DNA of 40,813 nt from assembly GCA_002269645.1 (NCBI GenBank), contig NIVC01003662.1, positions 1 to 40,813 of the forward strand, written 5' to 3'. Within the stretch, counting starts at the first letter, position 1. Each line of letters starts with the position of its first letter. Position numbers and translations under genes: made by a program. The notes under the pieces are model-generated. The model was not told the DNA's origin. It did no database searches and saw only the letters and a list, made by a program, of their open reading frames with translations. This stretch comes from Macrostomum lignano. Lineage: Eukaryota. Shown piece by piece: positions 8,213 to 30,915 of this stretch.

Positions 8213-9541
8213 ATGGCTGTCGAAGGGATGAAGTTGCTTGCAATATTGCTTCTGTTCTGTTCGATCCTGGCAAAGGAATGCCTCGCCAAGCGGAGAGACT
8301 ATCAAGCCGAGCTGTTCAAATACTTGAAGAACAACATTACTGACTACAGTCCGAAACTGCGACCTACGCTCGACCCAGACCAGGAGGTAGAAGTACACGT
8401 CATCGCCTCACCAGGAATGATTGTATCCGTGGACAGTGCCAAGCAGAGCATGACAATAGCTGGTATGTTTTTTGCCAGCTGGTACGAGGAGCGACTGGTC
8501 TGGGACCCCCGGCTTTTCGGAAATGTCACCGCGATGGACTGGGACGGCAACCAGCTCTGGTTCCCGGTCATATTTGTCTACAACGGCATGGGAGACAATC
8601 AACTACTCAGTCCTCAGTTTCCGCCGTACATCACTTCCGTGCAGTCCAATTTGTCTGTGGTATCGACAACCTGGAGACAGGAGTGGGAGTTCTCTTGCGA
8701 GTTTAATATGACCCGCTTCCCTCTGGACCGTCACATCTGCGACATGGAGCTGTTCATGAATTCCCGCGAATCGGACAAAATCGTCCTAAGAAAAGGCTTA
8801 TTATTGGCAAACTCATCCTTTGAATACAACGAAGGCGTGGCTTTTGCTCGTAACAGCGAATGGCGGGTGCTGAACCTCAGCACATTCATACGGTACAACG
8901 ACTTCAAAATGTTCAAAAATCTGCCGCCAGTGAAAATGCCGAACTTCGTGATGCGACTGGAGATTGAGCGAGTGTCCACTTACTACATGCTCAACGTGGT
9001 GACTCCCCTAATGCTGCTCACGCTGCTCCAGGTGCTCGTCTTCTTCGTGCCCGTCGAGTCTGGAGAGAAGCTGGGCTTCGGCATCACCATCATGCTGAGC
9101 TACACGGTGTTCCTGCTGCTGCTGGACGGCCTGCTGCCCAAGTCGCAGTCGATGCCGGCCGTGGCGTCGTTCATCACGGCGGCCATGGTGCTGTCGACGT
9201 CGTCTCTGCTGCTGACGTCGGTGTCGATTCGGTTCCACTTCGCTGCGGAGTCTCAGCCGATGCCGTCGTGTCTCCGGGTCGTGTTCGTGAGCTGCCTGGG
9301 CCGCGTGATGCTGTGCGGTGAGCGGCGAGGCGGCAGCAGGACGGCACCGGAGGGAGACCTCGATGATTCTGCTGTGAACAAACCGAGCCGTGACGATGTG
9401 AGGACCGGAGAGACGTCCGGAGAGCCGAGGCGCTCGGAGTGGCAGGTCGCAGAGGTCGCCGTGGAGCGGCTGCTGATCCTCCTAGGCTGTCCGGTCACTT
9501 TGGCCATCACGTTTTGTTTCCTTATTTTTCCGTTTCTTTGA
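8213..9541 (+). CDS. Atypical nicotinic-type Cys-loop ligand-gated cation channel subunit (gene 1), intronless, 442 aa
   Basis: Signal peptide, Cys-loop CEFNMTRFPLDRHIC (C-x13-C), M2 SGEKLGFGITIMLSYTVFLLLL, and EWQVAEVAVERL before M4. No loop-C CC. An alternative ATG lies at 8228. Confidence 0.95.
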   Translation: MAVEGMKLLAILLLFCSILAKECLAKRRDYQAELFKYLKNNITDYSPKLRPTLDPDQEVEVHVIASPGMIVSVDSAKQSMTIAGMFFASWYEERLVWDPRLFGNVTAMDWDGNQLWFPVIFVYNGMGDNQLLSPQFPPYITSVQSNLSVVSTTWRQEWEFSCEFNMTRFPLDRHICDMELFMNSRESDKIVLRKGLLLANSSFEYNEGVAFARNSEWRVLNLSTFIRYNDFKMFKNLPPVKMPNFVMRLEIERVSTYYMLNVVTPLMLLTLLQVLVFFVPVESGEKLGFGITIMLSYTVFLLLLDGLLPKSQSMPAVASFITAAMVLSTSSLLLTSVSIRFHFAAESQPMPSCLRVVFVSCLGRVMLCGERRGGSRTAPEGDLDDSAVNKPSRDDVRTGETSGEPRRSEWQVAEVAVERLLILLGCPVTLAITFCFLIFPFL

Positions 9542-10009
9542 AAAAACATTCGGTGGCACCTTCACGGAGATGGGTTTTCTGATGGGTTAAAAATTCTCGT
9601 GTCTGACGAGAGTTTCGATATCTAAGCACCAAATTAACTTTGAAGATGATACGAAAACATTTTAATAGTATAATAAAGTCGGTTACTAATATATAGTTGC
9701 ACTGAGTGAGGTGAAGAGTAAGTATCACGCTTCGACGTCACTAGTAAATTTTTTGGCGAACTGAATGTATACATGTATACGGACACTGTACTAAAAAATT
9801 ATGATTGCTCTTTTCTAGGCCAAGTTTTCATATGGTAAGACCCTCTTGGCACAGCGCAAAAAGCTTAAAAAGATCAGAATAAACAACTTTTCTATGCATT
9901 GCCGCTATCCAATAAGATTCTTTTAAGTTTTCGATTAAAGCTTGTCAAAAAACGCATGCTTGCTTCAGGTGTTATTTATAATATAAAGTAGTACAATCAT
10001 ATAATGATA

Positions 10010-10288
10010 GATAAAACCTGCCCTAATGGGCAGATTTGCAACCGACAGCTCAGCCGCAGCTATTGCGTGTCGCATCTGAAGGCTGCGTACGGCTGTTCAG
10101 TCCGAGGACTGGGGGGGGGGGTTCATACACACCCTCAATTACCCCCAGCTAATGCTGGCACCCATTTTACAGCTGGGTGAACTGAAGCGTGTCAGTGTCT
10201 TGCTCGAGGACACAAATTGTTCCAAGAGGGTCGAGAATCGAACCCCAGACCTTTCAGTCGTGAGTCCGACGCTCTGACCACTAGGCTA
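10010..10288 (-). mobile_element. tRNA-derived SINE with CORE/Meta-like central domain
   Basis: The minus strand shows A box TAGCCTAGTGG, B box GGTTCGATTCT, then GTGTCCTCGAGCAAGACACT...CACCCAGCTGTAAAATGGGT, which resembles conserved SINE central domains. The 3' boundary is approximate. Confidence 0.75.
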
Positions 10289-11196
10289 GATTTAACTACA
10301 TCCAATAATAAGACAGTTCAGATGACGCAAGTGCAGGAAGGTTCCGTGGGAATCGGCCAGAATTGCAAGTCTGAAAACGGCGCAGTATTATTTGATGCAA
10401 ACATTTTGAAGGGACTGCGTGCGGAAAACTTATTATAAATCACGCATGGGTTTCATCATATATTCTTTACCTTTTCATCCATATACATGTGAAAAATACT
10501 TGCTTGCTGTTATTTATTTTAAGTTACGCGTCCTAAAGCGCGTCTGCTGCCCCTTGAGGATCAAGGGAAAGACTGAGCACTACCGTGACTTATTGATATG
10601 TAATGTTTAAGGGTCTTTGACCTTAACTATGTATATAAGCTAGGACACAATGGATCAATGGTACAAGCTAAAATTAAATTGGGCATTAGTTATTATTATA
10701 CGCTATCGTATCTCAGATGAATCACATGTAAGTTCTTAGTTTGCGGCCGATTAGAAACTTATAGCTGCATTTAGTCATTCTACATTAGATGTCCACACGC
10801 TCCTCGAGCGAGCTTTATCCAGAGGCAAATATCAGCAGAGGAGCTGCGTAGAATCCGCAAATATCAGTCATACCTGGCAAAGTCAATTTAGAAAATGAAT
10901 CGCAAATAATACTAATTTTCTGATGAGACGAAAGTCACACAATGAGATATACCTGGCTCAGTGCTGCATCAGATTAATTACGAGATACTCAGTGACTGCA
11001 ATTCACAGATGCTCGTAGCAACTAAATAGGCAGACTATGCAAACTTCAGAATTTGATAGCCTACTGCAGTGTCAACATGTAAAACGCATTTACGCTTGTA
11101 TAGCTTAAAGGCTCGGGTTCAACAGGATCTGGGGATTTTATTGTCCAAGCTTAGCACGCTGCTCATCATTGAGACGGCTAACTCAACTACATCCAC

Positions 11197-12497
11197 ATGC
11201 CACAGTTCAGCCTTACCCGCTTCTGTTTGGTCTTCAGCGCCATCGCTAGTGTTCAGGCGGCTCAGGCTAGAGACTTTGAAGCGGAATTGCTCGATTACTT
11301 GAAGACTAACAACTCTCGGCATAGCCGTGCGCTCAGGCCGAAACTAGATCCACATCAGGTGATTGAAGTGTCGCTCGGTGCTTGTCTGCTGAAAATTCTG
11401 GACGTAGACAGCGCCAAGCAGAGGGTCACCATAGCCGCAACGGTCTACGCGATGTGGTTTGATGAACGCTTCGTCTGGGACCCGACCCAGTTTGGGAACA
11501 TCACAATATTGGAATGGGACAACCAGAAAATCTGGTTTCCTCCAATCGTTATTCTGAATGGTCTCGGCGACAATCAGCTGCTGAAGCCGGAGTTTCCATC
11601 ATTTTTGGCCTCGATGTCATCGAACAAGACATTGGTGTCGACTATTTGGCGACCAGATTTCGAGTTCACCTGCCAATTAAGCATGTACCGATTTCCAATG
11701 GATCGACACGTATGCAATTTTAGTTTGTATATGGAGGACCAGGCTCAGCTATACAAAAGTATCGTTCCAAGCAAGAAATTTTTGTGGAATGCGGAGAATG
11801 AGCAAGATGTGGAGTTAAATGAAATTGGTGCGTATAAAAACAGCAGCGAGTGGCGACTGCTAAGTTTGAGTACTTCGGTAGAATATGGACTTGTCAACTT
11901 TTTTAAGAATTCACCACTGATGCTAATACCAGCCTACAATATGCAAATGGAAATCGAGCGAGTGTCCACTTACTACATGCTACTACTGCACTACTGCTGC
12001 TCACGCTGCTCCAGGTGCTCGTCTTCTTCGTGCCAGTCGAGTCTGGAGAGAAGCTTGGCTTCGGCATCACCATCATGCTGAGCTACACGGTGTTCCTGCT
12101 GCTGCTGGACGGCCTGCTGCCCAAGTCGCAGTCGATGCCGGCCGTGGCGTCGTTCATCACGGCGGCCATGGTGCTGTCGACGTCGTCTCTGCTGCTGACG
12201 TCGGTAGCGATTCGGTTCCACTTCGCTGCGGAGTCTCAGCCGATGCCGTTGTGTCTCCGGGTCGTGTTCGTGAGCTGCCTGGGCCGCGTGATGCTGTGCG
12301 GTGAGCGGCGAGGCGGCAGCAGGACGGCGCCGGAGGGAGACGCCGATGACTCCGTGGTGAGCAAGGCGAGCGACGTCGGTGAAAGGCGCTCGGAGTGGCA
12401 GGTCGCAGCGGTCGCCGTGGAGCGGCTGATGATTTTCTTGGGCTGTCCTGCCGCAGTGGCCATTGTGGTTGCATTTGTCATTGTTCTATCCTGTTAA
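11197..12497 (+). pseudogene. Cys-loop receptor gene 2 with a net 7-nt deletion at the ECD/M1 junction; yields a 294-aa ECD-only ORF (11197-12081)
   Basis: Signal peptide and Cys-loop CQLSMYRFPMDRHVC. The M1-M4 region is intact in another frame (12015-12497). The lesion at 11982-11988 is seen by alignment with gene 1. Confidence 0.88.
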
Positions 12498-13047: not shown

Positions 13048-13055
13048 GGCACACA

Positions 13056-13320
13056 GTGAGGACCAAGGGTTTATTGGGCTGAGGACCATGGGTTCATGAG
13101 AATGAGATCCATGGGTTCAATGAGCTGAGGACCATGATTTCATGAGACTGAGGACCATGAATTCATGAGACTGAGGACCATGATTTCATGAGACCGAGGA
13201 CTATGAATTCATGAGACTGAGGACCATGATTTCATGAGACTGAGGACCATGATTTCATGAGACTGAAAACAATGGGTTCATTGGGCAGAAGAACAAGGCT
13301 TCGTTGTGCTGAAGACCAAT
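13056..13320. repeat. 23-nt tandem repeat (CATGAGACTGAGGACCATGA-ATT/TTT), related to the array at 1-300
   Basis: Shares the CTGAGGACCATG core and the period with the first array. A further degenerate patch lies at about 13530-13590. Confidence 0.88.
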
Positions 13321-14601: not shown

Positions 14602-15924
14602 ATGCTGTGTAAAATATTCATTAAAGCTCTTGCTCTTGTCGCCTTGCTGACCACTGAATATCAGTTAGCAGCAGGTGCTGAAGACTACGAGGCCGAACTG
14701 TTGCACTACTTAAGGCACAACATCACCGGCTACAGCCCGACTCTCCGACCATTGCTGAATTCAAAGCAGACTGTCTTTGTGTCAGCAGACATTATAATTG
14801 GTCAGATAATCTTGGTTGACAGCTCAAAGCAGAGTGTAACAATTTCCGCAATTATCTCAGCCAGCTGGAGCAACGAGCGGTTAATCTGGGACCCGGCCAA
14901 GTTCGGCAACATCACCGTGATGGACTGGGACAGCAGTCAGCTCTGGTTCCCTGTTGTGGTCGTCTACAACGGCCTTGGAGACAACCAGCTGCTGAGTCCT
15001 CAGCTTCCGACATTCATCACGTCAGTGTCGCCCAACAGATCTACAGTGTCCACCGGCTGGATCGGGCAGTGGGAGTTCTCCTGCAAGTTTAACATAAATC
15101 GGTTTCCGTTCGATCGGCACTCCTGCGAGATGGAGCTGTTTGCGAATGACCAGAGCCGCGGGTTGCCCAGCACTGTTATAAAGAAAGGGGTCATTTCTAC
15201 TGATGCGCCATCGGAGCCAACGGAGTACAACAATAAGGGTGCCTATAGGACCAATGGCGAATGGAACTTGGTCAACTTGACCACTTATATAAAGAAAATA
15301 CCCTATGAGGTGCTTAAGGGAGCATCAAAGGTTAATCTGTCTACGTTGGCTTTGCACATGGAGCTCGAGCGAGTGCCCACTTACTACATTTTGAGCGTAA
15401 TGACCCCCCTGCTGCTGCTCACGCTGCTCCAGGTGCTCGTCTTCTTCGTTCCCGTTGAGTCTGGAGAGAAGCTGGGCTTCGGCATCACAATCATGCTGAG
15501 CTACACGGTGTTTCTGCTGCTGCTGGACGGCCTGCTGCCCAAGTCGCAGTCGATGCCGGCCGTGGCGTCGTTCATCACGGCGGCCATGGTGCTGTCGACG
15601 TCGTCTCTGCTGCTGACGTCGGTGTCGATTCGGTTCCACTTCGCTGCGGAGTCTCAGCCGATGCCGTCGTGTCTCCGGTTCGTGTTTGTGAGCTGCCTGG
15701 GCCGCGCGATGCTGTGCGGAGTCAAGCGACGAGGTGGCAGCAGGACGGCGCCGGAGCGAAACCCCAACGACTCCGTGCTAAGCAAAGCGAGCAGCGACGG
15801 CGAGAGGCGCTCGGACTGGAAAGCAGCTTCAACCGCCGTGGAGCGGTGCATGATTGTCGTAGGCTTGCCAATCACCGCAGCGCTTTTGATCGCTTTGGTC
15901 GCGGTTCCTTTTGCTGAATTTTGA
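14602..15924 (+). CDS. Atypical Cys-loop receptor subunit (gene 3), intronless, 440 aa
   Basis: Signal peptide, Cys-loop CKFNINRFPFDRHSC, the shared M1-M3 cassette, and DWKAASTAVERC before M4. Confidence 0.95.
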   Translation: MLCKIFIKALALVALLTTEYQLAAGAEDYEAELLHYLRHNITGYSPTLRPLLNSKQTVFVSADIIIGQIILVDSSKQSVTISAIISASWSNERLIWDPAKFGNITVMDWDSSQLWFPVVVVYNGLGDNQLLSPQLPTFITSVSPNRSTVSTGWIGQWEFSCKFNINRFPFDRHSCEMELFANDQSRGLPSTVIKKGVISTDAPSEPTEYNNKGAYRTNGEWNLVNLTTYIKKIPYEVLKGASKVNLSTLALHMELERVPTYYILSVMTPLLLLTLLQVLVFFVPVESGEKLGFGITIMLSYTVFLLLLDGLLPKSQSMPAVASFITAAMVLSTSSLLLTSVSIRFHFAAESQPMPSCLRFVFVSCLGRAMLCGVKRRGGSRTAPERNPNDSVLSKASSDGERRSDWKAASTAVERCMIVVGLPITAALLIALVAVPFAEF

Positions 15925-16520: not shown

Positions 16521-17210
16521 TGTGAAGTTTCGGTCTTGTGAAGTTTCGGTCTTGTGAAGTTTCGGTCTTGTGAAGTTTCGGTCTTGTGAAGTTTCGGTCT
16601 TGTGAAGTTTCGGTCTTGTGAAGTTTCGGTCTTGTGAAGTTTCGGTCTTGTGAAGTTTCGGTCTTGTGAAGTTTCGGTCTTGTGAAGTTTCGGTCTTGTG
16701 AAGTTTCGGTCTTGTGAAGTTTCGGTCTTGTGAAGTTTCGGTCTTGTGAAGTTTCGGTCTTGTGAAGTTTCGGTCTTGTGAAGTTTCGGTCTTGTGAAGT
16801 TTCGGTCTTGTGAAGTTTCGGTCTTGTGAAGTTTCGGTCTTGTGAAGTTTCGGTCTTGTGAAGTTTCGGTCTTGTGAAGTTTCGGTCTTGTGAAGTTTCG
16901 GTCTTGTGAAGTTTCGGTCTTGTGAAGTTTCGGTCTTGTGAAGTTTCGGTCTTGTGGAGTTTCGGTCTTGTGAAGTTTCGGTCTTGTGAAGTTTCGGTCT
17001 TGTGAAGTTTCGGTCTTGTGAAGTTTCGGTCTTGTGAAGTTTCGGTCTTGTGAAGTTTCGGTCTTGTGAAGTTTCGGTCTTGTGAAGTTTCGGTCTTGTG
17101 AAGTTTCGGTCTTGGGAAGTTTCGGTCTTGTGAAGTTTCGGTCTTGTGAAGTTTCGGTCTTGTGAGTTTCGGTCTTGTGAAGTTTCAGTCTTGTGAAGTT
17201 TCGGTCTTGT
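16521..17210. repeat. 16-nt minisatellite (TGTGAAGTTTCGGTCT), about 43 copies
   Basis: Nearly homogeneous units; the array explains the 250-aa periodic ORF 16470-17222. Confidence 0.97.
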
Positions 17211-17710: not shown

Positions 17711-18535
17711 GCCCACCGAGAGACAGTGCCGCACACCGAGAGACAGTGCCGCACACCGAGAGACAGTGCCGCACACCGAGAGACAGTGCCGCACACCGAG
17801 AGACAGTGCCGCACACCGAGAGACAGTGCCGCACACCGAGAGACAGTGCCGCACACCGAGAGAAAGTGCCGCACACCGAGAGACAGTGCCGCACACCGAG
17901 AGAAAGTGCCGCACACCGAGAGACAGTGCCGCACACCGAGAGACAGTGCCGCACACCGAGAGACAGTGCCGCACACCGAGAGACAGTGCCGCACACCGAG
18001 AGACAGTGCCGCACACCGAGAGACAGTGGCGCACACCGAGAGACAGTGCCGCACACCGAGAGACAGTGCCGCACACCGAGAGACAGTGCCGCACACCGAG
18101 AGAAAGTGCTGCACACCGAGAGACAGTGCCGCACACCGAGAGAAAGTGCCGCACACCGAGAGACAGTGCCGCACACCGAGAGAAAGTGCCGCACACCGAG
18201 AGACAGTGGCGCACACCGAGAGACAGTGGCGCACACCGAGAGACAGTGGCGCACACCGAGAGAAAGTGCCGCACACCGAGAGACAGTGGCGCACACCGAG
18301 AGAAAGTGGCGCACACTAAGAGACAGTGGCGCACACCGAGAGACAGTGGCGCACACTAAGAGACAGTGGCGCACACCGAGAGACAGTGGCGCACACTAAG
18401 AGACAGTGCCGCACACCAAGAGACAGTGCCGCACACCGAGAGAAAGTGCCGCACACCGAGAGACAGTGCCGCACACCGAGAGACAGTGGCGCACACTAAG
18501 AGACAGTGGCGCACACCGAGAGACAGTGGCGCACA
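17711..18535. repeat. 20-nt minisatellite (GCACACCGAGAGACAGTGCC), about 41 copies
   Basis: Read directly; it has no stop codons in any frame, which produces six periodic ORFs. Confidence 0.97.
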
Positions 18536-19110: not shown

Positions 19111-20430
19111 CAGGGTTCGGCAAACTCCGGCTCGAGGACCGCATACAGCTTGCGAAGCATCCGGCCCTCGGGTCCTTTGAAACTTGACAAGCAATTCGGT
19201 CCCGCTCAAGGTTTGTGTCGCTTTGCAGCTCTCCTCTAATAATCTCTTCTCTGTAATAAATCTCTTATCTGTAACAAATGTCTTCTCTATTAAGTCTCCT
19301 TTCTAATAATCTTTTCTCTCTAATAATCTCTTCTCTCTAATAATCTCTTCTCTCTAATAATCTCTTCTCTCCAATAATCTCTTCTCTCTAATAATCTCTT
19401 CTCTCTAATCATCTCTTCTCTCTAATAATCTCTTCTCTCTAATAATCTCTTCTCTCTAATAAATCTCTTATCTGTAACAAATCTCTTCTCTATTAAGTCT
19501 CCTCTCTAATAATCTTTTCTCTCTAATAATCTCTTCTCTCTAATAATCTCTTCTCTCTAATAATCTCTTTTCTCTAATAATCTCTTCTCTCTAATAATCT
19601 CTTCTCTCTAATAATCTCTTCTCTCTAATAATCTCTTTTCTCTAATAATCTCTTCTCTCTAATAATCTCTTTTCTCTAATAATCTCTTCTCTCTAAAAAA
19701 TCTCTTGTCTGTAACAAATCTCTTCTCTATTAAGTCTCCTCTCTAATAATCTCTTCTCTCTAATAATCTCTTTTCTCTAATAATCTCTTTTCTCTAATAA
19801 TCTCTTTTCTCTAAAAAATCTCTTGTCTGTAACAAATCTCTTCTCTATTAAGTCTCCTCTCTAATAATCTTTTCTCTCTAATAATCTCTTTTCTCTAATA
19901 ATCTCTTCTCTCTAATAATCTCTTTTCTCTAATAATCTCTTCTCTCTAATAATCTCTTCTCTCTAATAATCTCTTCTCTCTAATAATCTCTTCTCTCTAA
20001 TAATCTCTTCTCTCTAATAATCTCTTCTCTCTAATAATCTCTTCTCTCTAATAATCTCTTCTCTCTAATAATCTCTTCTCTCTAATAATCTCTTTTCTCT
20101 AATAATCTCTTCTCTCTAATAAATCTCTTATCTGTAACAAATCTCTTCTCTATAAAGTCTCCTCTCTAAAAATCTTTTCTCTTCCTTCTCTCCTCTTCAC
20201 TTCTTTCACTTCTCTTCCCCTCTCGCTTTTCTCCTCTCTCTTCTCTCTCCTCTCTCGTCTCTACTCTCTCCTCTCTCCTCTCTCGTCTCTCGTCTCTACT
20301 CTCTACTATCTTGCCTCCTCTTTTCCTCTGACCCTCTTCCCTATCCCCTCCTCTATCCGGCAGTCATGCACTATGACTAAATTCTCTATCTACATGTAGC
20401 CCTTGAGGCAAAAAAGTTTTCCAACCCCTG
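19111..20430. mobile_element. hAT (Buster/Charlie-like) non-autonomous element filled with a CT-rich minisatellite
   Basis: Imperfect TIRs CAGGGTTCGGCAAACT and AGTTTTCCAACCCCTG (13/16 match). The 8-bp flanks CTTCAAAA and CTTTAGAA match at 6/8, and the right flank fits nnnTAnnn. Confidence 0.7.
19236..20356. repeat. 17-nt minisatellite (TAATAATCTCTTCTCTC) with a recurring interrupting block, followed by a polypyrimidine tract (20161-20356)
   Basis: Read directly. The block AAATCTCTT(A/G)TCTGTAACAAAT recurs five times. Confidence 0.93.
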
Positions 20431-21099: not shown

Positions 21100-22431
21100 A
21101 TGAATACGCCCTGGCAACTACGGCCTGCCGCGCTCCTTCTGCTGACGTTTGCGTTTGGCGGAATCCAACAGGCTCAGTCGAGAGGCTTTGAAGCTGAACT
21201 GCTCAAGTATCTGAAAAACAACATCACCGATTTCAGCCGAACACTTCGACCAAACATCAATCCCGAGAAGGTAGTTGAAGTGTCAATAATGGCGTTTCCT
21301 TTCCAAATTGTGTCAGTGAACAGCGTTAAACAAAGCATGACAATAAACATAATTTTGCAACTCAGCTGGTTCAATGAGCATCTGGTTTGGGATCCTGCGA
21401 AATTCGGACGTCTGTCTGTCATAGAATGGGAAAACCAGCAGATTTGGACTCCTCCGATTGTGATTTTTAATGGCATCGGTCAAAACCAGTTCCCCGTGCT
21501 TCGGTTCCCTTTGCACTTATTATCAACTACTAGAAACCTTTCAATAGTGGCCACCTCCTGGAGAGATGAAGTGGAATTCTCTTGCAAGCTCGACATGCGC
21601 CGTTTTCCATTTGACCGACACAGCTGCGATATGGAGCTGTACATGGAGGACCAAGCCCACATGTACAATTCAATAGTTCCTACAGTTAAAAATCTGTGGA
21701 ATGAATCAAAAGAATTCAATGAAAAAAGTGCCTACCAAGAGAGCAGTGAGTGGAGAATGTTGAACTTGAGCACAAGTGTACACACGCGACAGTTTCAAAC
21801 ATTCAAAAACTCGCCGCCGACTCTTTTACCGATCTACACGGTTCACATGGAGATCGAGCGGGTGTCGACTTACTATGTGTTGAATGTATTGACTCCCCTG
21901 CTGCTGCTCACGCTGCTCCAGGTGCTCGTCTTCTTCGTGCCCGTCGAGTCTGGAGAGAAGCTGGGCTTCGGCATCACCATCATGCTGAGCTACACGGTGT
22001 TCCTGCTGCTGCTGGACGGCCTGCTGCCCAAGTCGCAGTCGATGCCGGCCGTGGCGTCGTTCATCACGGCGGCCATGGTGCTGTCGACGTCGTCTCTGCT
22101 GCTGACGTCGGTGTCGATTCGGTTCCACTTCGCTGCGGAGTCTCAGCCGATGCCGTCGTGTCTTCGGTTCGTGTTCGTGAGCTGCCTGGGCCGCGTGATG
22201 CTGTGCGGTGAGAGGCGAGGCGGCAGCAGGACGGCGCCTGAGGAAGACGCCGACGACGCCGCGGTGAGCAAAGCGGGCCATGAAGACGAGAGGCCCGTAG
22301 AGACCTCCGGAGACCCGAGGCGCTCGGAGTGGCAGGTCGCAGCGGTCGCTGTGGAACGGCTGATGATTTTCTTGGGCTGTCCGACTGCAGGGGCCATTTT
22401 GGTTGCATTCGTCATTGTTCCTGTGCTGTGA
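21100..22431 (+). CDS. Atypical Cys-loop receptor subunit (gene 4), intronless, 443 aa
   Basis: Signal peptide, Cys-loop CKLDMRRFPFDRHSC, the shared M1-M3 cassette, and EWQVAAVAVERL. Confidence 0.95.
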   Translation: MNTPWQLRPAALLLLTFAFGGIQQAQSRGFEAELLKYLKNNITDFSRTLRPNINPEKVVEVSIMAFPFQIVSVNSVKQSMTINIILQLSWFNEHLVWDPAKFGRLSVIEWENQQIWTPPIVIFNGIGQNQFPVLRFPLHLLSTTRNLSIVATSWRDEVEFSCKLDMRRFPFDRHSCDMELYMEDQAHMYNSIVPTVKNLWNESKEFNEKSAYQESSEWRMLNLSTSVHTRQFQTFKNSPPTLLPIYTVHMEIERVSTYYVLNVLTPLLLLTLLQVLVFFVPVESGEKLGFGITIMLSYTVFLLLLDGLLPKSQSMPAVASFITAAMVLSTSSLLLTSVSIRFHFAAESQPMPSCLRFVFVSCLGRVMLCGERRGGSRTAPEEDADDAAVSKAGHEDERPVETSGDPRRSEWQVAAVAVERLMIFLGCPTAGAILVAFVIVPVL

Positions 22432-23451
22432 TCAGCTGGCACCGAAATGAAATTGTTGAACAAATGATTCGCGTCAGTATAATTCAATTTTGGCTTAAGC
22501 ACAATGCTTTAGTCTGACTGCCCGCGTTTCCTGCAACTCATTTTTGGCCTCTCTGGACGGAAAGCCATGGAGCGGTGCGTGCGCGTGAAGTGTCTGGTCA
22601 CAGCGCGAATATCAACTTCTACTGAAATCAATTTCGTCAGTAGTATCTGCAGTGCATGCATCGGTCTTAGTTTGTTTGAGTAGCTTTTTTAATTCGTGAG
22701 AAGTTCTATCATTTACTCAAAAAATAGCGTCTATGTCCCTAAGCTACTGAACTCAAAATTTAAGCAACCCATGTCGGCTTTTTTTCTCACAAGTGGCGAA
22801 AATCAGCAGTCCCACTTTTCCTGTTGCCGCCATACAAAGTGGCCTATCTAGGCAAGACATGTGGCCTAGAACACGACTGCGCGTTAGCCCTCCATAATTT
22901 TATGACTAAACTCAGACGCTTTTAGGGAAAAAAAGCCTCTTTGTTCTCTTTGGGTGAGCAAGCTACGTCTAAAAAATCGATTGGAATTCTGAGGACCAAA
23001 GCAAACAGCAAACACAGAGACTTCTCTGTCTCTTGGCTCAAATTCCTTGCAAAATGATACTATCAATATTTTGCTTAGCTATACCAGATCTACAATGAAG
23101 AATTGATGCAATTGAATCAACAGTCAGTATCGTGTTTTACCTCAAGCGTGAGTAGCGTGTAGCTACAGGAAAGTTGTCAGGTGTTACGACAGAGAGATTC
23201 GAACACTAAACTTGGCTGGGGATAAAGACAAGGTTGGTGGGGGTTAAAAAAGTGACGCGCAAAGAAATCAATAAACACGTAAAACAGATGAAAAGAAAAG
23301 TTATTCTGCATAAAAAAAAGGATCTGAATTTCGCGAGATAATCCGACGATTTTCAAAATCTAAAAATTTTCATTGCTGTTACTTAACAGTAGTAAGATGT
23401 CACATGCGTATCTAAAAAACTGCAAAACAAAGTCGGGCAATCAGAAAGCAG

Positions 23452-24754
23452 TTATTCGACGAAGGGCAGAACCAGAAACGCAAAAAAATGGCGACAATCG
23501 CCACGCAGCCCACGACGGCTATCAGCCGCTCCACGGCGGTTGAAGCTGTTTTCCAGTCCGAGCGCCTCTCGCCGTCGTCGCCCGCCTTTCTCACCACAGC
23601 GTCGTCGGCGTCTTCCTCAGGCGCCGTCCTGCTGCCGCCTCGCCTCTCACCGCACAGCATCACGCGGCCCAGGCAGCTCACAAACACGAACCGAAGACAC
23701 GACGGCATCGGCTGAGACTCCGCAGCGAAGTGGAACCGAATCGCCACCGACGTCAGCAGCAGAGACGACGTCGACAGCACCATGGCCGCCGTGATGAACG
23801 ACGCCACGGCCGGCATCGACTGCGACTTGGGCAGCAGGCCGTCCAGCAGCAGCAGGAACACCGTATAGCTCAGCATGATGGTGATGCCGAAGCCCAGCTT
23901 CTCTCCGGACTCGACGGGAACGAAGAAGACGAGCACCTGGAGCAGCGTGAGCAGCAGCAGGGGAGTCACCACATTCAACACATAGTAAGTGGACACCCGC
24001 TCGATCTCCAGTCGTACCACGTAGGTCGGCAGTTTCATTTTCGGTTGTCCCTTGAAAACCGCATATTCTTTGTAGCGCACGAACGTGCTCAAGTTCAGCA
24101 GATTCCATTCGCTGTTCCTAACATAGGCCCCCACTTCATTGAATTCCACTGATGGGCCATACTGAAGGCTGCCCTTTTTTACAGCAGGTTGTCCTTTCCC
24201 CGCCCCTGGTCGTTAGCGAACAGCTCCAAGTCGCAGGTGTGCCGATCGAACGGGAACCGACGCATGTCGAATTCGCAGGAGAACTCCCATTCACGCCTCC
24301 AGATGGCTGATACCACTGACTTGTCTGGTGCCACGGATGTGATGAACGGCGGAAACTGTGGACTTAGCAGCTGGTTGTCTCCGATGCCATTGTACACAAA
24401 TATCACAGGAAAGTAGATCTTGCCGATCTCCCAATCCATCACGGTGATGTTGCCAAACTCCTTAGGATCCCAGACCAGTCTTTCCTCATACCAAGTTGCA
24501 AACATCAGGGCAGTAATTTTAATACTCTGCTGTACGCTGTCCACCATCACAATCTGACCCATCACGGTGGACAAGTAGACGCTCATTGACTGACTGTCCA
24601 AGGCTGGTCGCAGAGTCGGGCTGTAGTCCGTGATGTTGTTTTCCAGATACTTCAGCAAAGCCGCTTCGAAATCTTGCTTAGGCATCTTGGAGTAGCAGCT
24701 GGTCAGCTGGGTTGCGATGGCAACAAAAAATAATAATTTGCTGAGTCCTAACAT
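23452..24754 (-). CDS. Atypical Cys-loop receptor subunit (gene 5); two apparent 1-nt deletions in homopolymers; 434 aa if corrected
   Basis: ATG at 24754 (MLGLSKLL...) and Cys-loop CEFDMRRFPFDRHTC. One added base in the C-run at 24198-24201 joins the two ORFs. One added base in the A-run at 23482-23488 restores a paralogue-like end, IFFAFLVLPFVE*, with the stop at 23452-23454. The gene could be a pseudogene or the shifts could be assembly errors. Confidence 0.82.
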
Positions 24755-26239
24755 TTCGGCAAAACTATTAGTCAAAGGCTCGCGTGACGAGTGCATTAAT
24801 TCCACGAGAGTGAATGTCTTTTATGCTGCATCTCGACAGTCTCAACTGTTTCTACACAGCCAATGGAAGTGCAGTTTAACAAAAGCTTTTCCCACCGAAC
24901 AGGTTTGGCAAACATAAGGTTCAGTTGGGTTGAGAGGGTTGGCTGCATATCGAGTTTCTGGATTGCAAAAGCTACAATTTGGAGCGTTCTACCAGTGCGT
25001 TTTACCTTAGGCAAATTTTAACTAGAACTTAATGCCACTCAAACAGTCACACATCGTTGCTGGGAGCTTCCAGTAAGCTTGAAGACAAGAAATTTTACAC
25101 TCAAAGAGCCCATTGCTGAGCCTAGCTGCACATGCCTCTACCACAATGAATCTCTCGAGATCTCTCTCCCATCCCGCGCCGGTAGCTTCAGTCCCAACTA
25201 CTTCTGTTTTGCTAATTCAAAAATCCGTTGTCATGGACGCTAGCGCAAGCTATTTACGGAAAGCAAGTGATATTTATTATTCATGCAGCTGAGTCCACTT
25301 CTCAACAGTGAATTGGAGGGAGGACAATTTTGAATTTCTTCTGAGGCAGTAAAACACAGGTTCTCGCCCACGGACTACTTAAGTAGAAGGACGCGACACG
25401 CGCAAAACGTGCAAATTTTATTGGAGGCTGAATATTCAATTTTATGTAGCTCGACTCCAGAAACTCGCCGAAGTGTAGTTTTTTCACATGATACAAATAA
25501 TTTAGTCCTTGTTCATGTAACATATGTAATGCATGATTAAAACGATGCAGAAACCTTAGAAATTAGTTTCAAGCGACGAAAACTAACTTTTTCTGGTGAG
25601 TTTCGAGTCTCGACGTGCGGCATTTGTAGCACAAAATATAGCTCTTCATTTTGATATAGCACTTATTTTAAGTGATTCTTTTAGCTGTTCATTGTTACTG
25701 TGAAGCGGACCTTTTTGACCTGGTCATAAGAAAACCTATCGCAAGATGTACAGACATAAAACAGATACCACTGATTCTGCGCCAATCGTATCGGATAAAT
25801 AGAGTCAAGACGAACTAAGACGAAAGATTTTAAGAACACGAATTTTGAGTCTTAGTAGCCATTCAATATTTTTATGCCATATTAATATTATTGGCCTTTT
25901 TAAAATGTATGCAAAAAGTATATATCAAAGTGGTATAAGATAGCTAGCAGGTTTCTTGTAGAAAGCAAATGCGAAAACATGCAGTTTAAACAGTATCCAA
26001 CAAAAGCGTACAACGAAATATTTTACAACAAAATGATCTATTGTATCAAGACAACTTGCTATAACATTGCATCAAAAAAACTAACAGTACGCAGTTCTGG
26101 CAAGGCACCACTCATAGTGATCTTCATCATGCAAAGCCAGCTGAATGAAATGCATGTAGTCAATAAGAATAACAAATAGAAATGAGGATAAAGTGCACAA
26201 TCTTGCACCTGGACACGAGTTGGTGGCAAATGATCAGGT

Positions 26240-26490
26240 GTAGTAGGTAAAGTAGGTAGGTAGGTACTAGCTACTTGTTGTAACAGCAGTACAGTGACAG
26301 TTGTAACAGCTCAGCCTTGGACACTTCATTGTCACAACAGTTCTGGAGCATCCTCCTTAAGATGTGTGTACACTTGTTTGTGAGGAAGCCAACCACTCGA
26401 GTATTTGTTCCATGTATACAAAATAGCAACCTCCATGGCCTTGCCTATAGATAGAGAATTCTTTCTCCAGACCATCCAATTGAAAGTCAC
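26240..26490 (-). mobile_element. Decayed P-element/THAP9-like transposase exon
   Basis: After a splice-acceptor-like TCCTTTTCAG the frame reads DFQLDGLEKEFSIYRQGHGGCYFVYMEQILE. From memory, this resembles the QxDxLExxFxxxRQxxGxxY C-terminal catalytic motif of P-type transposases; not verified by search. Confidence 0.5.
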
Positions 26491-27620
26491 CTGAAAAGGA
26501 TAAGGAAAATAGCTGCATAGCATGAATACTTAATGATACACAACCTAAATAAAACAAGTTAATACTTATAATATTATTCATACCTAGCATGACATTTAAA
26601 TTGGAAGTGAGATAAATTGAATTTATTAATTAAGTGAGTTAAATTGAAAGTGGATAGGCCTATATTGTGACATCTGAATACAATACTTCCATGGGTGACC
26701 ATCTAACTGCTGCCCCCCCCCTTAACCAGAGATACTGTGCCGCCATTGAATTTCTATATATTAACAGAAAAACTGATTAAAACAATTTAGGCCCTATATG
26801 CCTCTGAAAGAATATAAGATGAGTAAGTTCTTAAAAACATAAATATCTATAAGTTCTATAGCAAAAATATTAATGCAGTATATATTTTTGAAGCATGGGG
26901 CTATAATTATAAATAGACTGACATCAGTCATAAAAAATATATAGGTTTACCAGTAAAATGATTAATAAGAATAGAATACTTAAAGTTAAATACTTATATT
27001 AATAGGCCTATATTTTATAAATTATCTTAGTCTAAGCCTAGCTAAGTCAATAATAGATAGAAGAGATAGCTTATAGGTTTACCAAGAATACCAACTAATG
27101 CCAATGGTAATGATATACAATAGTTAGCTAGGCCCTATACCTAGATAATGTAGATATAGGCCTATGCCTAATAGTTTAATAATGAAATACTGCAGGCCCC
27201 TATGCTGTAATAACAAATAGCTACATTATATTTTATCATCGCCAGGGTAGTAGCAGTGGGCCCTGACTAGCAAATGTTGATAAATTTCCAAAAAGTATAC
27301 TTGCATAGATGGCCTATGCCTCCTATGGTCTACATACAAATTCTAATTTAAATTAGGTTAGGCTAGCTATGTATAAACGATACATTTCTAAACAGTACTA
27401 AGCTAGACGGAAATTATGTATTGATAAAAAATGGGACAAAAACAAAAAACACTCTAAAAACTAAAAAGATCTGCATTCTATGATAAAAACATTTCAATGC
27501 CCTGCTAAATCTATAGTATACGCTAAGGGAAATTCAGCCTCCAAAAAAAATTACACGAATCGTGCGTGTTGCGTCCTATATAAACGACAATTAAGTAGTC
27601 CGTGTTCTCGCCGTGCGAGT

Positions 27621-28315
27621 CACACCCATTAGGGCCTAGCATCCATTAGGGCCTAGCACCCATTAGGGCCTAGCACCCATTAGGGCCTAACACCCATTAG
27701 GGCCTAACACCCATTAGGGCCTAACACCCATTAGGGCCTAACACCCATAAGGGCAGCTAACACCTATTAGGGCCAAACACCCATTAGGGCCTAACACCCA
27801 TTAGGGCCTAACACCCATTAGGGCCTAACCCCCATTAGGGCCTAACACCCATAAGGGCAGCTAACACCTATTAGGGCCTAACACCCATTAGGGCCTAGCA
27901 CCCATTAGGGCCTAGCACCCATTAGGGCCTAGCACCCATTAGGGCCTAACACCCATTAGGGCCTAACACCCATTAGGGCCTAACACCCATTAGGGCCTAG
28001 CACCCATTAGGGCCTAACACCCATTAGGGCCTAACACCCATTAGGGCCAAACACCCATTAGGGCCTAACACCCATTAGGACCTAACACCCATTAGGGCCT
28101 AGGCACCCATTAGGGCCTAAACACCCATAAGGGCAGCTAACACCTATTAGGGCCAAACACCCATTAGGGCCTAACACCCATTAGGGCCTAACACCCATTA
28201 GGGCCTAACACCCATTAGGGCCTAACACCCATTAGGGCCTAACACCCATTAGGGCCTAACACCCATTAGGGCCTAACACCCATTAGGGCCTAACACCCAT
28301 TAGGGCCTAACACCC
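27621..28315. repeat. 17-nt minisatellite (ACACCCATTAGGGCCTA), about 41 copies, with recurring variant units
   Basis: Read directly. The variant ACACCCATAAGGGCAGCTAACACCT occurs three times. Confidence 0.96.
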
Positions 28316-28508
28316 AGAGTACATGTCTGACGATTAGAAAGTCTGTGCCGCTGTACACGAGTCTAACATAAAGGCTAACTAAGCCGCTCTAACAATAGGA
28401 AAAACTTGAAAATGTACATTTAGTTACGTTTAAATAAAGTAAAAAGTACAATTTAACAGAAGCGTTGACTATCTGTACGACTGCAAATATTATTGCTTGT
28501 TAGTAATG

Positions 28509-29273
28509 TACGAGGGGTGTACCAGAAGTAGTGTCACTTTTGCTTGCTTCCACAAGTATTAATGTGTGTTTAAAAAATCATATGCCCTAAAAGTTAGCAG
28601 CTTATTTTAGCTTTCATGCCACGAAAGTCCGATATTTACAGTATAAGTGCTTCCTGCTGTAAGCAGCATGCATTTGTTCGCATACCCTTAGCCATAGAAA
28701 TACACACCGCATAGTGCTTCTATGCTCACTCAGAACAAAGCCACAAGTACAGCTGATCAAGCACAGAGGTGCAAGACAGCAGCTGCAAGATTTGTTCCAG
28801 TCATGGACCCTAACATTCACTCTACAGAAGGGGAGACATGCAATTTTTACACTTTGGAGTCTTGGTCTGAAATGCCCTGAAATTCGCGAAAACTTGACCC
28901 GCATTCACGGTCCCGATTCCATCAGTTGACGAACAGTTTACAGGTGGATCGAACAGTTTGAGGCTGGCTGTAGATATCAAAGGCCAACCACCTTTGGGTA
29001 AGTTGGCAAAACATACTGCCGGTCAGCCTCGAGCTGGTGTCTTACAACTCTGTGCTTAATCAGCTCTACTTGTGGCTTTCTTCTGAGTGAGCATAGAAGC
29101 ACTATGCGGTGTGTATTTCTATGGCTAAGGGTATGCGAACAAATGCATGCTGCTTACAGCAGGAAGCACTTATAAATATCGGACTTTCGTGGCATGAAGG
29201 CTAAAATAAGCCGCTAACTTTTAAGGCATATGATTTTTTAACACACATTACGTCGTAATACACCTTTTCACGT
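28509..29273 (+). mobile_element. Mariner-derived foldback element: 5' TIR, N-terminal HTH fragment and an inverted copy of its 5' region
   Basis: Starts TA-CGAGGGGTGTACCAGAAGTA. Encodes MDPNI...RHAIFTLWSLGLKCPEIRENLTRIHGPDSIS*RTVYRWIEQFEAG, a mariner HTH-like sequence. Inverted arms lie at about 28560-28785 and 29032-29250. Confidence 0.82.
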
Positions 29274-29300
29274 TCAATTTTGATCAATGTCCAGTTCTAA

Positions 29301-29436
29301 AAAAACTAGCGGAAATTCAATTCAGATTGAATATGATTTTGTGTATGGCTAAACCCTACTTCGGTTAGAATGTTTTGAGCTGGGGTTAGACTGGGCCCCA
29401 GTCTAAATTGTCTGAATTGAATTTCCGCTAGTTTTT
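29301..29436. repeat. Small inverted-repeat element (MITE-like) with perfect 26-bp arms and an internal hairpin
   Basis: AAAAACTAGCGGAAATTCAATTCAGA (29301-29326) is the reverse complement of 29411-29436. An internal TAGACTGGG-C-CCCAGTCTA hairpin lies at about 29387-29405. Confidence 0.75.
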
Positions 29437-29589
29437 CCGCTAGAAGCCACAACAGCACAAGATGTCCTACCGAAAGAAGGTTGCGAGGCGTACAAAAGGC
29501 GAGTTGAAGACCTAGGAACAGAGGAGAACGTTATCAATCTTAGTTTTTATGTCTAGTTCGATCAACTTATTGAAAAACCTGTTGCAAAT

Positions 29590-30915
29590 TCAGTCAACGA
29601 AAGGCCGAACCAGGAACACGCAGAAGATAGCGACGGTGGCCACGCAACCCACGACGGCCATCAGCCGCTCCACAGCGACCGCTGCGACCTGCCACTCCGA
29701 GCGCCTCGGGTCTCCGGAGGTCTCTACAGGCTTCTCGCCGTCATCCCCGCTCGCCTTGCTCACGTTGTCGGCGTCTCCCTCTGGCGCCGTCCTGCTGCCG
29801 CCTCGCCGCTCACCGCACAGCAGCGCGCGGCCCAGGCAGCTCACGAACACGAACCGAAGACACGACGGCATCGGCTGAGACTCCGCAGCGAAGTGGAACC
29901 GAATCGCCACCGACGTCAGCAGCAGAGACGACGTCGACAGCACCATGGCCGCCGTGATGAACGACGCCACGGCCGGCATCGACTGCGACTTGGGCAGCAG
30001 GCCGTCCAGCAGCAGCAGGAACACCGTATAGCTCAGCATGATGGTGATGCCGAAGCCCAGCTTCTCTCCGGACTCGACGGGCACGAAGAAGACGAGCACC
30101 TGGAGCAGCGTGAGCAGCAGCAGGGGAGTCACCACGTTGAGCATGTAGTAAGCGGACACTCGCTCGATCTCCAGTCGCACCACGTAGGTCGGCAGCGGCA
30201 TTTTCGGTAGTTCTTTGAAAACTTTATAAAAGCGGAAGTGCACGAAGGTGCTCACATTTAGTATTCGCCATTCACTGTTTTCTCTATAGGCAGACAACTC
30301 ATTGTATTGCAGACCCTGTGCGAGCATGTTGCCCTTGTGCGGCATCACCAGCTCGTTTCCGCGGCCCATGTCGTACATGTAGAGCTCCAAGTCACAGGTG
30401 TGCTGATCGAACGGGAACTGCCTCATGTCGAACTCGCAGGAAAACTCCCAGCTCCGTTTCCAACTAGCGCTTACTACGGTGGAATTCGGTGACACGGAAG
30501 TCAGGAATGTGGGAATCTGGGGCTTCATCAGCTGATTGTCGCCGATACCATTGTACACAAAAATGATGGGGAACCAGATCTGGCTGGTGCCCCAGTCCAC
30601 GACCGACACTCCCCCGAACTCGGACGCGTCCCACACCAGGCGCTGCTCCTCCCAGGTGGCCAGGAGCAATGCGGAAATCTTGAAGCTCTGGCTGGCGCTG
30701 TCAACATACACAATTTGATTCACCATGACGGCCACAGAGATGTTCACAACCTCCGTGTGGTTAAGTCTTGGTCTGACCATCGGATGATAGTCGGTAATGT
30801 TGTTCTTCAAGTACTTCATGAGCTCGATTTGTGGATCAGATGCGTTGCACAGTGGCAGAGCAGCAACGAGAGCCACTGCTGGCAAAAGCAGCAGGTCCAC
30901 TCTTGGATGAAGCAT
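29590..30915 (-). CDS. Atypical Cys-loop receptor subunit (gene 6), intronless, 441 aa
   Basis: The first ATG is at 30915 (the ORF track begins at a TTG, 30927). Signal peptide, Cys-loop CEFDMRQFPFDQHTC, shared cassette, and EWQVAAVAVERL. Confidence 0.95.
   Translation of the reverse strand: MLHPRVDLLLLPAVALVAALPLCNASDPQIELMKYLKNNITDYHPMVRPRLNHTEVVNISVAVMVNQIVYVDSASQSFKISALLLATWEEQRLVWDASEFGGVSVVDWGTSQIWFPIIFVYNGIGDNQLMKPQIPTFLTSVSPNSTVVSASWKRSWEFSCEFDMRQFPFDQHTCDLELYMYDMGRGNELVMPHKGNMLAQGLQYNELSAYRENSEWRILNVSTFVHFRFYKVFKELPKMPLPTYVVRLEIERVSAYYMLNVVTPLLLLTLLQVLVFFVPVESGEKLGFGITIMLSYTVFLLLLDGLLPKSQSMPAVASFITAAMVLSTSSLLLTSVAIRFHFAAESQPMPSCLRFVFVSCLGRALLCGERRGGSRTAPEGDADNVSKASGDDGEKPVETSGDPRRSEWQVAAVAVERLMAVVGCVATVAIFCVFLVRPFVD

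What the first reader, a model, noticed from the sequence alone, without database searches (positions are those of the whole stretch)
8966..30165. Variable sensor / constant pore: ~99% identical M1-M3 DNA cassette joined to ~50% identical ligand-binding domains
Seen: genes 1 (9017-9322) and 4 (21907-22212) differ at only 2 of 306 nt, synonymous sites included. Their first 160 mature ECD residues are only about 51% identical (82/160 by hand count). All six copies switch abruptly to the shared sequence at about ERVSTYY. Purifying selection cannot keep synonymous sites identical while the ECD of the same gene diverges this far. Inference: domain-restricted gene conversion keeps the assembly/pore module interchangeable while the binding domains diversify. 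This resembles the logic of protocadherin or antibody variable/constant regions, but is achieved without splicing.
Basis: partly seen in the sequence, partly recalled or inferred. Interest (0 to 1): 0.92.

Follow-up and report, generated by a model that had tools for sequence, protein, structure and literature searches.

The report
Gene conversion homogenises receptor pore cassette
Six neighbouring nicotinic-receptor-like ion-channel genes of a flatworm-like animal share a nearly identical ~360-base pore-encoding stretch, although the rest of each gene is anciently diverged; the cause is most likely repeated copying between the genes (regional gene conversion), a process already known from other receptor gene clusters.

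Summary
The window holds six intronless nAChR-like Cys-loop channel genes: four intact, two with one frameshift each. All six share a ~360-nt block running from pre-M1 through M1-M3 into the start of the intracellular loop. The block is at least 90% identical on average, and 110 nt are identical in all six. Four-fold degenerate sites differ at 6% in the block core and at 65% (saturated) in the ligand-binding domains. Flanking DNA does not align.

Codon bias cannot explain this: expected codon mismatch is 0.37 and observed is 0.06. Block GC3 is 0.88-0.91, against 0.51-0.72 in the ligand-binding domains. A tandem array of the same family in Macrostomum lignano has equally divergent ligand-binding domains but ordinary M1-M3 divergence (72-78% nt identity, dS about 1).

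Best explanation: recurrent, GC-biased, regional interlocus gene conversion, confined to the segment still similar enough to recombine. The adaptive gloss of an "interchangeable assembly/pore module" is untested.

The same pattern is documented in teleost protocadherin variable exons and in TLR1/TLR6. I found no report of it for pentameric channels. Verdict: a new member of a known kind, of moderate interest.

The parts
8213..9541 (+). g1: intact intronless nAChR-like pLGIC gene, 442 aa
   Evidence: ORF. Pfam Neur_chan_LBD and Neur_chan_memb.
11197..12497 (+). g2: the same kind of gene, broken by one frameshift (probable pseudogene or assembly indel)
   Evidence: Two ORF pieces carry the LBD and the membrane domain respectively.
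14602..15924 (+). g3: intact pLGIC gene, 440 aa, with the most divergent copy of the block
21100..22431 (+). g4: intact pLGIC gene, 443 aa. The AF2 model gives M1 at residues 256-278, M2 at 286-308, M3 at 317-343 and M4 at 410-442.
23412..24805 (-). g5: pLGIC gene broken by one frameshift. ORF bounds are given; the first ATG codons are at 24796 and 24754.
29590..30927 (-). g6: intact pLGIC gene. ORF bounds are given; the first ATG is at 30915.
9000..9358 (+). Homogenised block in g1, covering M1 through M3 and the first part of the intracellular loop
   Evidence: At least 90% mean pairwise identity in 30-nt windows.
11983..12341 (+). Homogenised block in g2
15401..15762 (+). Homogenised block in g3
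21890..22248 (+). Homogenised block in g4
23610..23968 (-). Homogenised block in g5. It forms an inverted repeat with the g4 block about 1.3 kb away.
29773..30131 (-). Homogenised block in g6
22318..22369 (+). Second, smaller island of similarity before and into M4, shown here for g4. Equivalents: g1 9428-9479, g2 12384-12435, g3 15805-15856, g5 23516-23567(-), g6 29655-29706(-). It comes in two haplogroups, {g1,g2,g4,g6} and {g3,g5}.

Best explanation
The six genes are old tandem and inverted duplicates of an intronless nAChR-like subunit gene. Their extracellular domains, signal peptides, M4 ends and all flanking DNA have diverged to saturation.

A ~360-nt segment encoding M1, the M2 pore helix, M3 and the first residues of the intracellular loop has been overwritten repeatedly from one copy to another. 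The process is non-reciprocal homologous recombination, that is, interlocus gene conversion, between copies in both orientations. Conversion needs long stretches of near-identity. It therefore persists only in the segment that purifying selection had kept most similar, and each event restores the identity that permits the next. Tracts end where similarity collapses, in the extracellular domain on one side and in the variable loop on the other. GC-biased repair has driven third codon positions in the block to about 90% G+C.

Shown here: the identity pattern, the synonymous-site contrast, the GC3 shift, the mosaicism, and the absence of the pattern in the M. lignano array.

Inferred: the recombination mechanism itself, that conversion is still ongoing, and that its limits are set by homology rather than by selection.

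Consequence, also inferred: every subunit of this array carries the same pore (GEK ring, 9' Leu, cation-type) and the same M1-M3 surfaces, behind very different extracellular domains that lack the canonical ACh-binding residues.
For: - Contrast in divergence. Core dS is 0.02-0.12 and ECD dS is saturated. Four-fold sites differ at 6% against 65%.
- Old duplicates. Flanks and signal peptides do not align, and self-BLAST finds similarity between copies only within coding sequence.
- Not codon bias. Expected codon mismatch from the block's own codon usage is 0.365 and observed is 0.059. In 15 columns all copies share the same minority codon.
- GC bias. GC3 is 0.88-0.91 in the block, 0.51-0.72 in the ECD, and 0.54-0.79 in the M. 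lignano core. Among third-base differences between g4 and mB, 26 are GC in the window and AT in M. lignano, against 4 the other way.
- Control array. In M. lignano contig NIVC01000059.1, three tandem intronless paralogues have ECD amino-acid identity of 38-50%, like the window. Their core is only 72-78% nt identical, with dS 0.9-1.3.
- Mosaicism. Shared variants inside the block fail the four-gamete test. An example is the pair of sites carried by {g3,g5} and {g5,g6}. A 27-nt indel and the pre-M4 island are distributed across copies differently from the ECD tree.
- Both frameshifted copies keep an intact, homogenised block.
- The block extends beyond the region that is conserved at protein level in M. 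lignano.
- Exact shared runs of 110-262 nt remain available as recombination substrate.
Against: - No raw reads were available, so assembly or polishing effects cannot be excluded directly.
- The ECD tree is star-like and the six window copies are weakly monophyletic. The classical proof, orthologues closer in the unconverted part and paralogues closer in the converted part, could not be made.
- The source species is unidentified. The comparison array may be paralogous rather than orthologous.
- Four-gamete failures among about 10 informative sites could in part be recurrent mutation at GC-rich third positions.
Confidence: 0.85

Rival explanations
1. Conversion is selected for. Identical M1-M3/pore modules are advantageous because the subunits co-assemble combinatorially into heteropentamers, so selection keeps the module interchangeable while the sensor domains diversify. 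It concerns why the pattern persists, not how it arises.
For: The block coincides largely with a structural unit, M1 through M3 plus the post-M3 helix. dN inside the block stays low, 0.004-0.02. The most variable ECD segments are those that align with binding-site loops B, F and C: 29-41% identity, with indels in the loop B and loop F segments. TLR1/TLR6 authors argued for an analogous co-evolutionary need (PMC2077338).
Against: The related M. lignano array works with M1-M3 at 75-84% amino-acid identity and no homogenisation. The block overruns into non-conserved loop sequence, and its 3' end differs between pairs. Two of the six copies that keep the block carry frameshifts. There is no expression or co-assembly evidence. 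From general nAChR knowledge, assembly specificity lies mainly in the extracellular domain.
Confidence: 0.2
2. Assembly or polishing artefact: reads from paralogous blocks were cross-mapped, and consensus polishing made truly divergent blocks look alike.
For: Short multi-copy repeats can be homogenised by short-read polishing. No reads were available to check.
Against: The blocks are not identical. They carry private and shared substitutions and copy-specific indels. Boundaries are graded and specific to each pair. The strong GC3 shift relative to both the ECDs and the M. lignano core needs long evolutionary time. Polishing cannot turn about 75% identity into about 97%. The contig runs through many minisatellites, which implies long reads far longer than 360 nt.
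Confidence: 0.05
3. Nucleotide-level constraint without conversion: extreme codon bias, an mRNA structure or an overlapping element holds synonymous sites fixed independently in each copy.
For: GC3 is very high, and long antisense ORFs overlap the block.
Against: Codon usage predicts 36.5% codon mismatch and 5.9% is observed. Minority codons are shared at the same positions in all copies. The same protein segment in M. lignano tolerates dS of about 1. Frameshifted copies keep the block. Rfam finds nothing in the window. The antisense ORFs are the expected by-product of GC-rich third positions.
Confidence: 0.03
4. Recent whole-gene duplication followed by hyper-fast divergence of the ECDs, through positive selection or targeted mutagenesis, with the block simply retaining the ancestral state.
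For: The ECD loops that align with ligand-binding loops are the most variable segments.
Against: ECD four-fold sites are saturated. Signal peptides, UTR-proximal DNA and intergenic DNA do not align either. Selection on protein sequence cannot saturate synonymous and non-coding sites.
Confidence: 0.02

Closest known systems
Regional gene conversion among variable exons of teleost clustered protocadherins (fugu and zebrafish; PMC1852091, and Noonan et al. 2004 as cited there)
   Same: Tandem receptor paralogues with divergent 5' (recognition) parts. Paralogues within a subcluster share a 3' part more than 99% nt identical across a discrete boundary. Synonymous sites are included, GC3 is raised in the homogenised part, and the pattern is lineage-specific (absent in coelacanth, as it is absent here in the M. 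lignano array).
   Different: The protein family differs (cadherins against pentameric channels). The protocadherin tracts are much longer and sit next to spliced constant exons. Here the genes are complete, intronless and in both orientations, and the converted part is an internal segment rather than running to the 3' end.
TLR1/TLR6 gene conversion (PMC2077338)
   Same: The ligand-recognition part diverges while a block encoding the transmembrane and signalling region is kept alike by independent conversion events. That paper already states the idea that conversion limits divergence of a functional module while other domains diversify.
   Different: Two genes rather than six.
Lineage-specific expansions of intronless, tandemly arrayed nAChR-like genes in lophotrochozoans (PMC6896357)
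   Same: Intronless nAChR-like genes in tandem arrays. Many lack alpha-type Cys-Cys and ACh-binding residues, LBD diversity is high, and some copies are pseudogenes.
   Different: That study does not mention gene conversion (0 occurrences) or any nucleotide-level homogenisation of the membrane domain. The closest relatives of the window genes are flatworm (Macrostomum) genes, not molluscan ones.
Cephalopod chemotactile receptors (nAChR-derived chemoreceptors; reviewed in PMC11526382)
   Same: Intronless nAChR-derived channels that have lost ACh binding and show diversification at the ligand-binding pocket. They form homo- and heteropentamers.
   Different: No orthology is indicated: apart from the Macrostomum proteins P0002 (50%) and the fragment P0005 (61%), nearly all listed hits are no more than 34% identical. 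A chemosensory role for the window genes is pure speculation. I found no report of DNA-level homogenisation of the pore in chemotactile receptors.

Membership tests
Cys-loop pentameric ligand-gated ion channel, nAChR/5-HT3 (cationic) branch | Neur_chan_LBD and Neur_chan_memb domains | tested here: met
   Both Pfam domains are above their cut-offs in all four intact genes and in the matching pieces of g2 and g5.
Cys-loop pentameric ligand-gated ion channel, nAChR/5-HT3 (cationic) branch | Two cysteines 13 residues apart (the Cys-loop) with the FP-x-D motif | tested here: met
   C162 and C176 of g4, together with P170 and D172, are invariant in a 31-sequence alignment. The pattern is visible in all six translations.
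Cys-loop pentameric ligand-gated ion channel, nAChR/5-HT3 (cationic) branch | Beta-sandwich ECD followed by four membrane helices; fold match to solved receptors | tested here: met
   The AF2 model has mean pLDDT 80.6 with M1-M4 helices. The top Foldseek hits are alpha4beta2, muscle and alpha7 nAChRs at E of about 1e-27. By sequence, nAChR alpha is the best PDB hit at E = 5e-43.
Cys-loop pentameric ligand-gated ion channel, nAChR/5-HT3 (cationic) branch | Cation-type pore: Glu at -1' (GEK) and Leu at 9' of M2 | tested here: met
   SGEK followed by a Leu at the ninth position is present and identical in all six copies. The position assignment comes from the alignment to the alpha subunit and from general knowledge.
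ACh-binding alpha-type nAChR subunit | Vicinal Cys-Cys in loop C | tested here: not met
   There is no Cys-Cys in the loop C region of any copy. The alpha subunit's CC aligns to non-Cys residues.
ACh-binding alpha-type nAChR subunit | Loop B tryptophan (alpha1 W149), the cation-pi partner of ACh | tested here: not met
   In the HMMER alignment the alpha-subunit Trp aligns to His in g4. The other copies have no Trp in that segment.
Regional interlocus gene conversion (concerted evolution of part of a gene) | Paralogue identity at synonymous sites far higher in one segment than in the rest of the gene | tested here: met
   Four-fold sites differ at 6% against 65%. dS is 0.02-0.12 against saturated.
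Regional interlocus gene conversion (concerted evolution of part of a gene) | Not explained by codon bias | tested here: met
   Expected codon mismatch is 0.365 and observed is 0.059. Minority codons are shared in 15 columns.
Regional interlocus gene conversion (concerted evolution of part of a gene) | Raised GC3 in the converted segment (GC-biased conversion) | tested here: met
   GC3 is 0.88-0.91, against 0.51-0.72 in the ECD and 0.54-0.79 in the M. lignano core. The substitution asymmetry is 26:4.
Regional interlocus gene conversion (concerted evolution of part of a gene) | Mosaic or incongruent ancestry between adjacent segments | tested here: met
   There are four-gamete failures inside the block. 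The pre-M4 island haplogroups and the 27-nt indel disagree with the well-supported ECD clade g2+g4. The number of informative sites is small.
Regional interlocus gene conversion (concerted evolution of part of a gene) | Paralogues closer than orthologues in the converted part and orthologues closer in the unconverted part | tested here: inconclusive
   The block clusters by genome: the window copies are 94-99% identical to each other and 67-75% identical to M. lignano. The ECD tree is star-like, with no one-to-one orthologues.
Regional interlocus gene conversion (concerted evolution of part of a gene) | Pattern verified in raw reads or independent assemblies | not testable with these tools
   The window's genome is absent from all searchable collections.

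The most novel reading that the evidence does not exclude
The array is a modular receptor repertoire. Many different sensor domains, possibly chemosensory and not cholinergic, sit on one obligatorily identical pore/M1-M3 module. Selection favours conversion so that any mixture of subunits forms a symmetric, uniformly conducting heteropentamer. This would be a DNA-level equivalent of the variable/constant design, not previously described for ligand-gated channels.
Probability: 0.15. Interest if true: 0.7.

Novelty: new member of a known kind. Interest (0 to 1): 0.5.

Why it matters
The finding extends regional gene conversion to pentameric ligand-gated channels. This evolutionary mode is well known from protocadherins, TLRs and MHC-type receptors.

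It carries a practical warning. Whole-gene or membrane-domain trees of expanded invertebrate nAChR-like families can be misled by homogenised segments, inflating apparent 'lineage-specific expansion'.

It also provides a natural set of subunits with the same pore and about 50% divergent extracellular domains. That is useful descriptive material for asking which parts of a pLGIC tolerate divergence. Contrasting this array with the M. lignano array, which has escaped conversion, may show how arrays enter or leave concerted evolution.

Tried and rejected
- Identifying the source genome failed.
  - Exact-product look-ups for g4, P0001 and P0002 returned nothing.
  - The JGI metagenome scan found no relative.
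  - A search with a retroelement RT ORF gave only 62-66% identical unnamed hits.
  - BLAST of the window against the M. lignano locus found no shared non-coding repeats.
  - The species therefore remains 'a relative of, or possibly another locus of, Macrostomum'.
- One database query failed on time-out.
- A Mercenaria locus fetched as a molluscan control proved multi-exon and was dropped.
- A GENECONV-style permutation was considered and not run. All six copies are homogenised, so the block holds too few polymorphic sites. The synonymous-site contrast and the outgroup array are more informative.
- Site-model dN/dS on the ECD was rejected because dS is saturated.
- Rfam found no RNA family in the window.
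- Template switching during retroposition, as a source of chimeric genes, was considered and rejected. It would not replace six resident tandem copies in place.


Full report
WHAT IS THERE

The window is animal-type DNA of about 46% G+C. It is rich in minisatellites and retroelement remnants. It contains six intronless genes of about 440 codons:
- g1 8213-9541(+)
- g2 11197-12497(+)
- g3 14602-15924(+)
- g4 21100-22431(+)
- g5 23412-24805(-)
- g6 29590-30927(-)

There are no further copies or fragments. Four genes are intact. g2 and g5 each carry one frameshift.

All six have the Pfam ligand-binding and membrane domains of neurotransmitter-gated channels. By sequence the best solved relatives are nAChR alpha subunits, at E = 5e-43. 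An AlphaFold2 model of g4 has mean pLDDT 80.6. It shows the beta-sandwich, M1 (256-278), M2 (286-308), M3 (317-343), a post-M3 helix, a disordered loop (372-405) and M4 (410-442). It matches alpha4beta2, muscle and alpha7 nAChR structures at E of about 1e-27.

The Cys-loop and a cation-type M2 (GEK, 9' Leu) are present. The loop C Cys-Cys and the loop B tryptophan of ACh-binding alpha subunits are not. These are therefore nAChR-like subunits with an unknown ligand.

THE OBSERVATION

The stretches 9017-9322 and 21907-22212 differ at 2 of 306 nt.

Identity along the aligned genes:

| Region | Mean pairwise identity |
|---|---|
| Flanks | 25-35% |
| Most of the extracellular domain | about 42-67% |
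| The block | 93-100% |
| Downstream of the block | falls again |

Block coordinates and exact runs:
- The stretch with at least 90% mean identity is about 360 nt: g1 9000-9358, g2 11983-12341, g3 15401-15762, g4 21890-22248, g5 23610-23968, g6 29773-30131.
- 110 nt are identical in all six copies.
- Exact pairwise runs reach 262 nt.

In protein terms the block runs from within M1 to about 17 residues beyond the post-M3 helix. Identity already rises over the pre-M1 ERVSTYY codons.

Divergence measures:
- NG86 dS is saturated in the ECD and 0.02-0.12 in the core.
- Four-fold degenerate sites differ at 382/584 (65%) in the ECD and 63/1034 (6%) in the core, p of about 1e-148.

Outside the coding sequences the copies share nothing detectable. 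The duplications are therefore old, and only this segment looks young.

WHY IT IS NOT SELECTION, CODON BIAS OR AN ARTEFACT

Codon bias. Independent draws from the block's own codon usage would mismatch at 36.5% of degenerate codons. The observed figure is 5.9%. In 15 columns all copies share the same minority codon.

The control array. The most useful control came from the only close public relatives, which are Macrostomum lignano proteins:
- In a library of 1.84 billion representative proteins, apart from the Macrostomum proteins P0002 (50%) and the fragment P0005 (61%), nearly all listed hits are no more than 34% identical.
- The M. lignano contig NIVC01000059.1 carries a tandem array of three intact intronless paralogues plus an M3-M4 fragment.
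- Their ECDs are as divergent as the window's (38-50% amino-acid identity). Their M1-M3 core is only 72-78% nt identical (75-84% amino-acid), with dS 0.9-1.3.

Purifying selection on this protein segment thus yields dS of about 1, not about 0.05.

Artefact. The blocks differ by private and shared substitutions and by copy-specific indels. Their boundaries are graded.

SIGNATURES OF GENE CONVERSION

- GC3 is 0.88-0.91 in the block, 0.51-0.72 in the ECDs and 0.54-0.79 in the M. lignano core.
- Among third-base differences between g4 and M. lignano mB at otherwise identical codons, 26 are GC in the window and AT in M. lignano, against 4 the reverse. This is the classical footprint of GC-biased conversion and needs evolutionary time.
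- Variants inside the block are shared in incompatible combinations: {g3,g5}, {g5,g6}, {g2,g5,g6}, {g4,g5,g6}, {g1,g2}, {g3,g6}. They fail the four-gamete test.
- Downstream, a 27-nt indel is present in g1, g4 and g6 only.
- A 52-nt pre-M4 island comes in two haplogroups, {g1,g2,g4,g6} and {g3,g5}. The ECD tree supports g2+g4 at 93-97% bootstrap.
- The pairs most alike in the core are not simply neighbours: g1/g4 and g5/g6 each differ at 4 positions, and g4/g5 and g4/g6 at 5. Exchange has crossed between strands.
- Both frameshifted copies retain an intact block.

MECHANISM AND ITS LIMITS

The best-supported account is recurrent non-reciprocal recombination, confined to the stretch still similar enough to serve as substrate. 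In the M. lignano array, M1-M3 is also the most similar part of the genes. This suggests that conversion took hold where constraint had slowed divergence and then became self-sustaining.

At the 3' side the block overruns into loop residues that are not conserved in M. lignano, and its end differs between pairs. That fits mechanical tract ends better than selection-defined ends.

Whether selection additionally favours an identical module is open. I put this at about 0.2. It would need co-expression and comparative data.

From general knowledge, nAChR assembly specificity resides mainly in the extracellular domains.

COMPARISON WITH WHAT IS KNOWN

Fugu protocadherin variable exons show exactly this set of features (PMC1852091):
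- divergent 5' parts;
- 3' parts more than 99% identical;
- a discrete boundary;
- raised GC3;
- lineage specificity.

TLR1/TLR6 show conversion of the transmembrane and signalling part while the ligand-binding part diverges, with the same functional argument (PMC2077338). Intronless tandem nAChR-like expansions are known in lophotrochozoans, but that study does not mention conversion (PMC6896357). Full-text searches combining Cys-loop, ligand-gated channel or chemotactile receptor terms with gene conversion found no description of this in pentameric channels. The library is incomplete, so this is absence of evidence only.

The finding is a new member of a known kind.

WHAT COULD NOT BE DONE

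The window's genome is in none of the searchable collections, so read-level validation was impossible. So were species identification and a true orthologue/paralogue test. The ECD tree is star-like, with the six copies weakly monophyletic.

VERDICT

The gene-conversion mechanism is supported, with confidence of about 0.85. The adaptive interpretation is unproven. Interest is moderate (0.5).

Noticed in passing
window 36400-39950 (-): Degraded LTR-retrotransposon-like remnant. Short ORFs carry reverse transcriptase (RVT_1) and integrase zinc-binding (Integrase_H2C2) matches, and a neighbouring ORF carries a THAP domain. The coding capacity is split over about ten short ORFs in more than one frame, so there are several breaks. 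They were not counted exactly or analysed further.
   Followed up: partly
window 1589-2047 (-) and 5791-6876 (+): Two reverse-transcriptase fragments (RVT_1), probably of non-LTR retrotransposons, lie upstream of the array. The best database relatives are only 62-66% identical and unnamed.
   Followed up: partly
window 16521-17210, 17714-18535, 19234-20182, 27622-28316; also 1-275 and 13057-13318: Large minisatellite arrays (units of 16-20 nt, 40-56 copies) fill the spacers between genes. The same 23-nt unit occurs both at the window start and between g2 and g3.
   Followed up: no
window 21829-22294 (+) against 23564-24029 (-): g4 and g5 lie tail to tail. Their blocks form a 466-nt inverted repeat of 95% identity about 1.3 kb apart. 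Crossing-over there would invert the spacer and swap the loop/M4 tails of the two genes, which is a possible source of the mosaic 3' ends (inference).
   Followed up: no
L002 7863-9188, 12783-14105, 16333-16674 (M. lignano NIVC01000059.1): Two intact pLGIC paralogues and an M3-M4 fragment flank the one gene called in the collection's gene table. None of the three is a called gene there. The family is therefore under-counted in protein databases.
   Followed up: partly
L003 17009-17247 against 38276-38514 (Mactra antiquata CM103827.1): Two adjacent multi-exon nAChR-like genes, fused in the prediction KAL4222471.1, have M1-M2 exons that are 91% nt identical over 239 nt. Their other exons are no more than about 73% identical or not alignable, and ECD pieces are 41-56% amino-acid identical. 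This may be an older, independent exon-restricted conversion in a bivalve.
   Followed up: partly
protein P0016 (MetaClust UPI00078A240E): A distant pLGIC whose M2-M3 segment is present twice in exact tandem. This is either an internal duplication or an assembly artefact.
   Followed up: no
window 21826-22281 (-), 22064-22408 (-), 12157-12474 (-), 9253-9549 (-): Long antisense and off-frame ORFs overlie every copy of the block. They are the expected by-product of about 90% G+C at third positions, not evidence of further genes.
   Followed up: no
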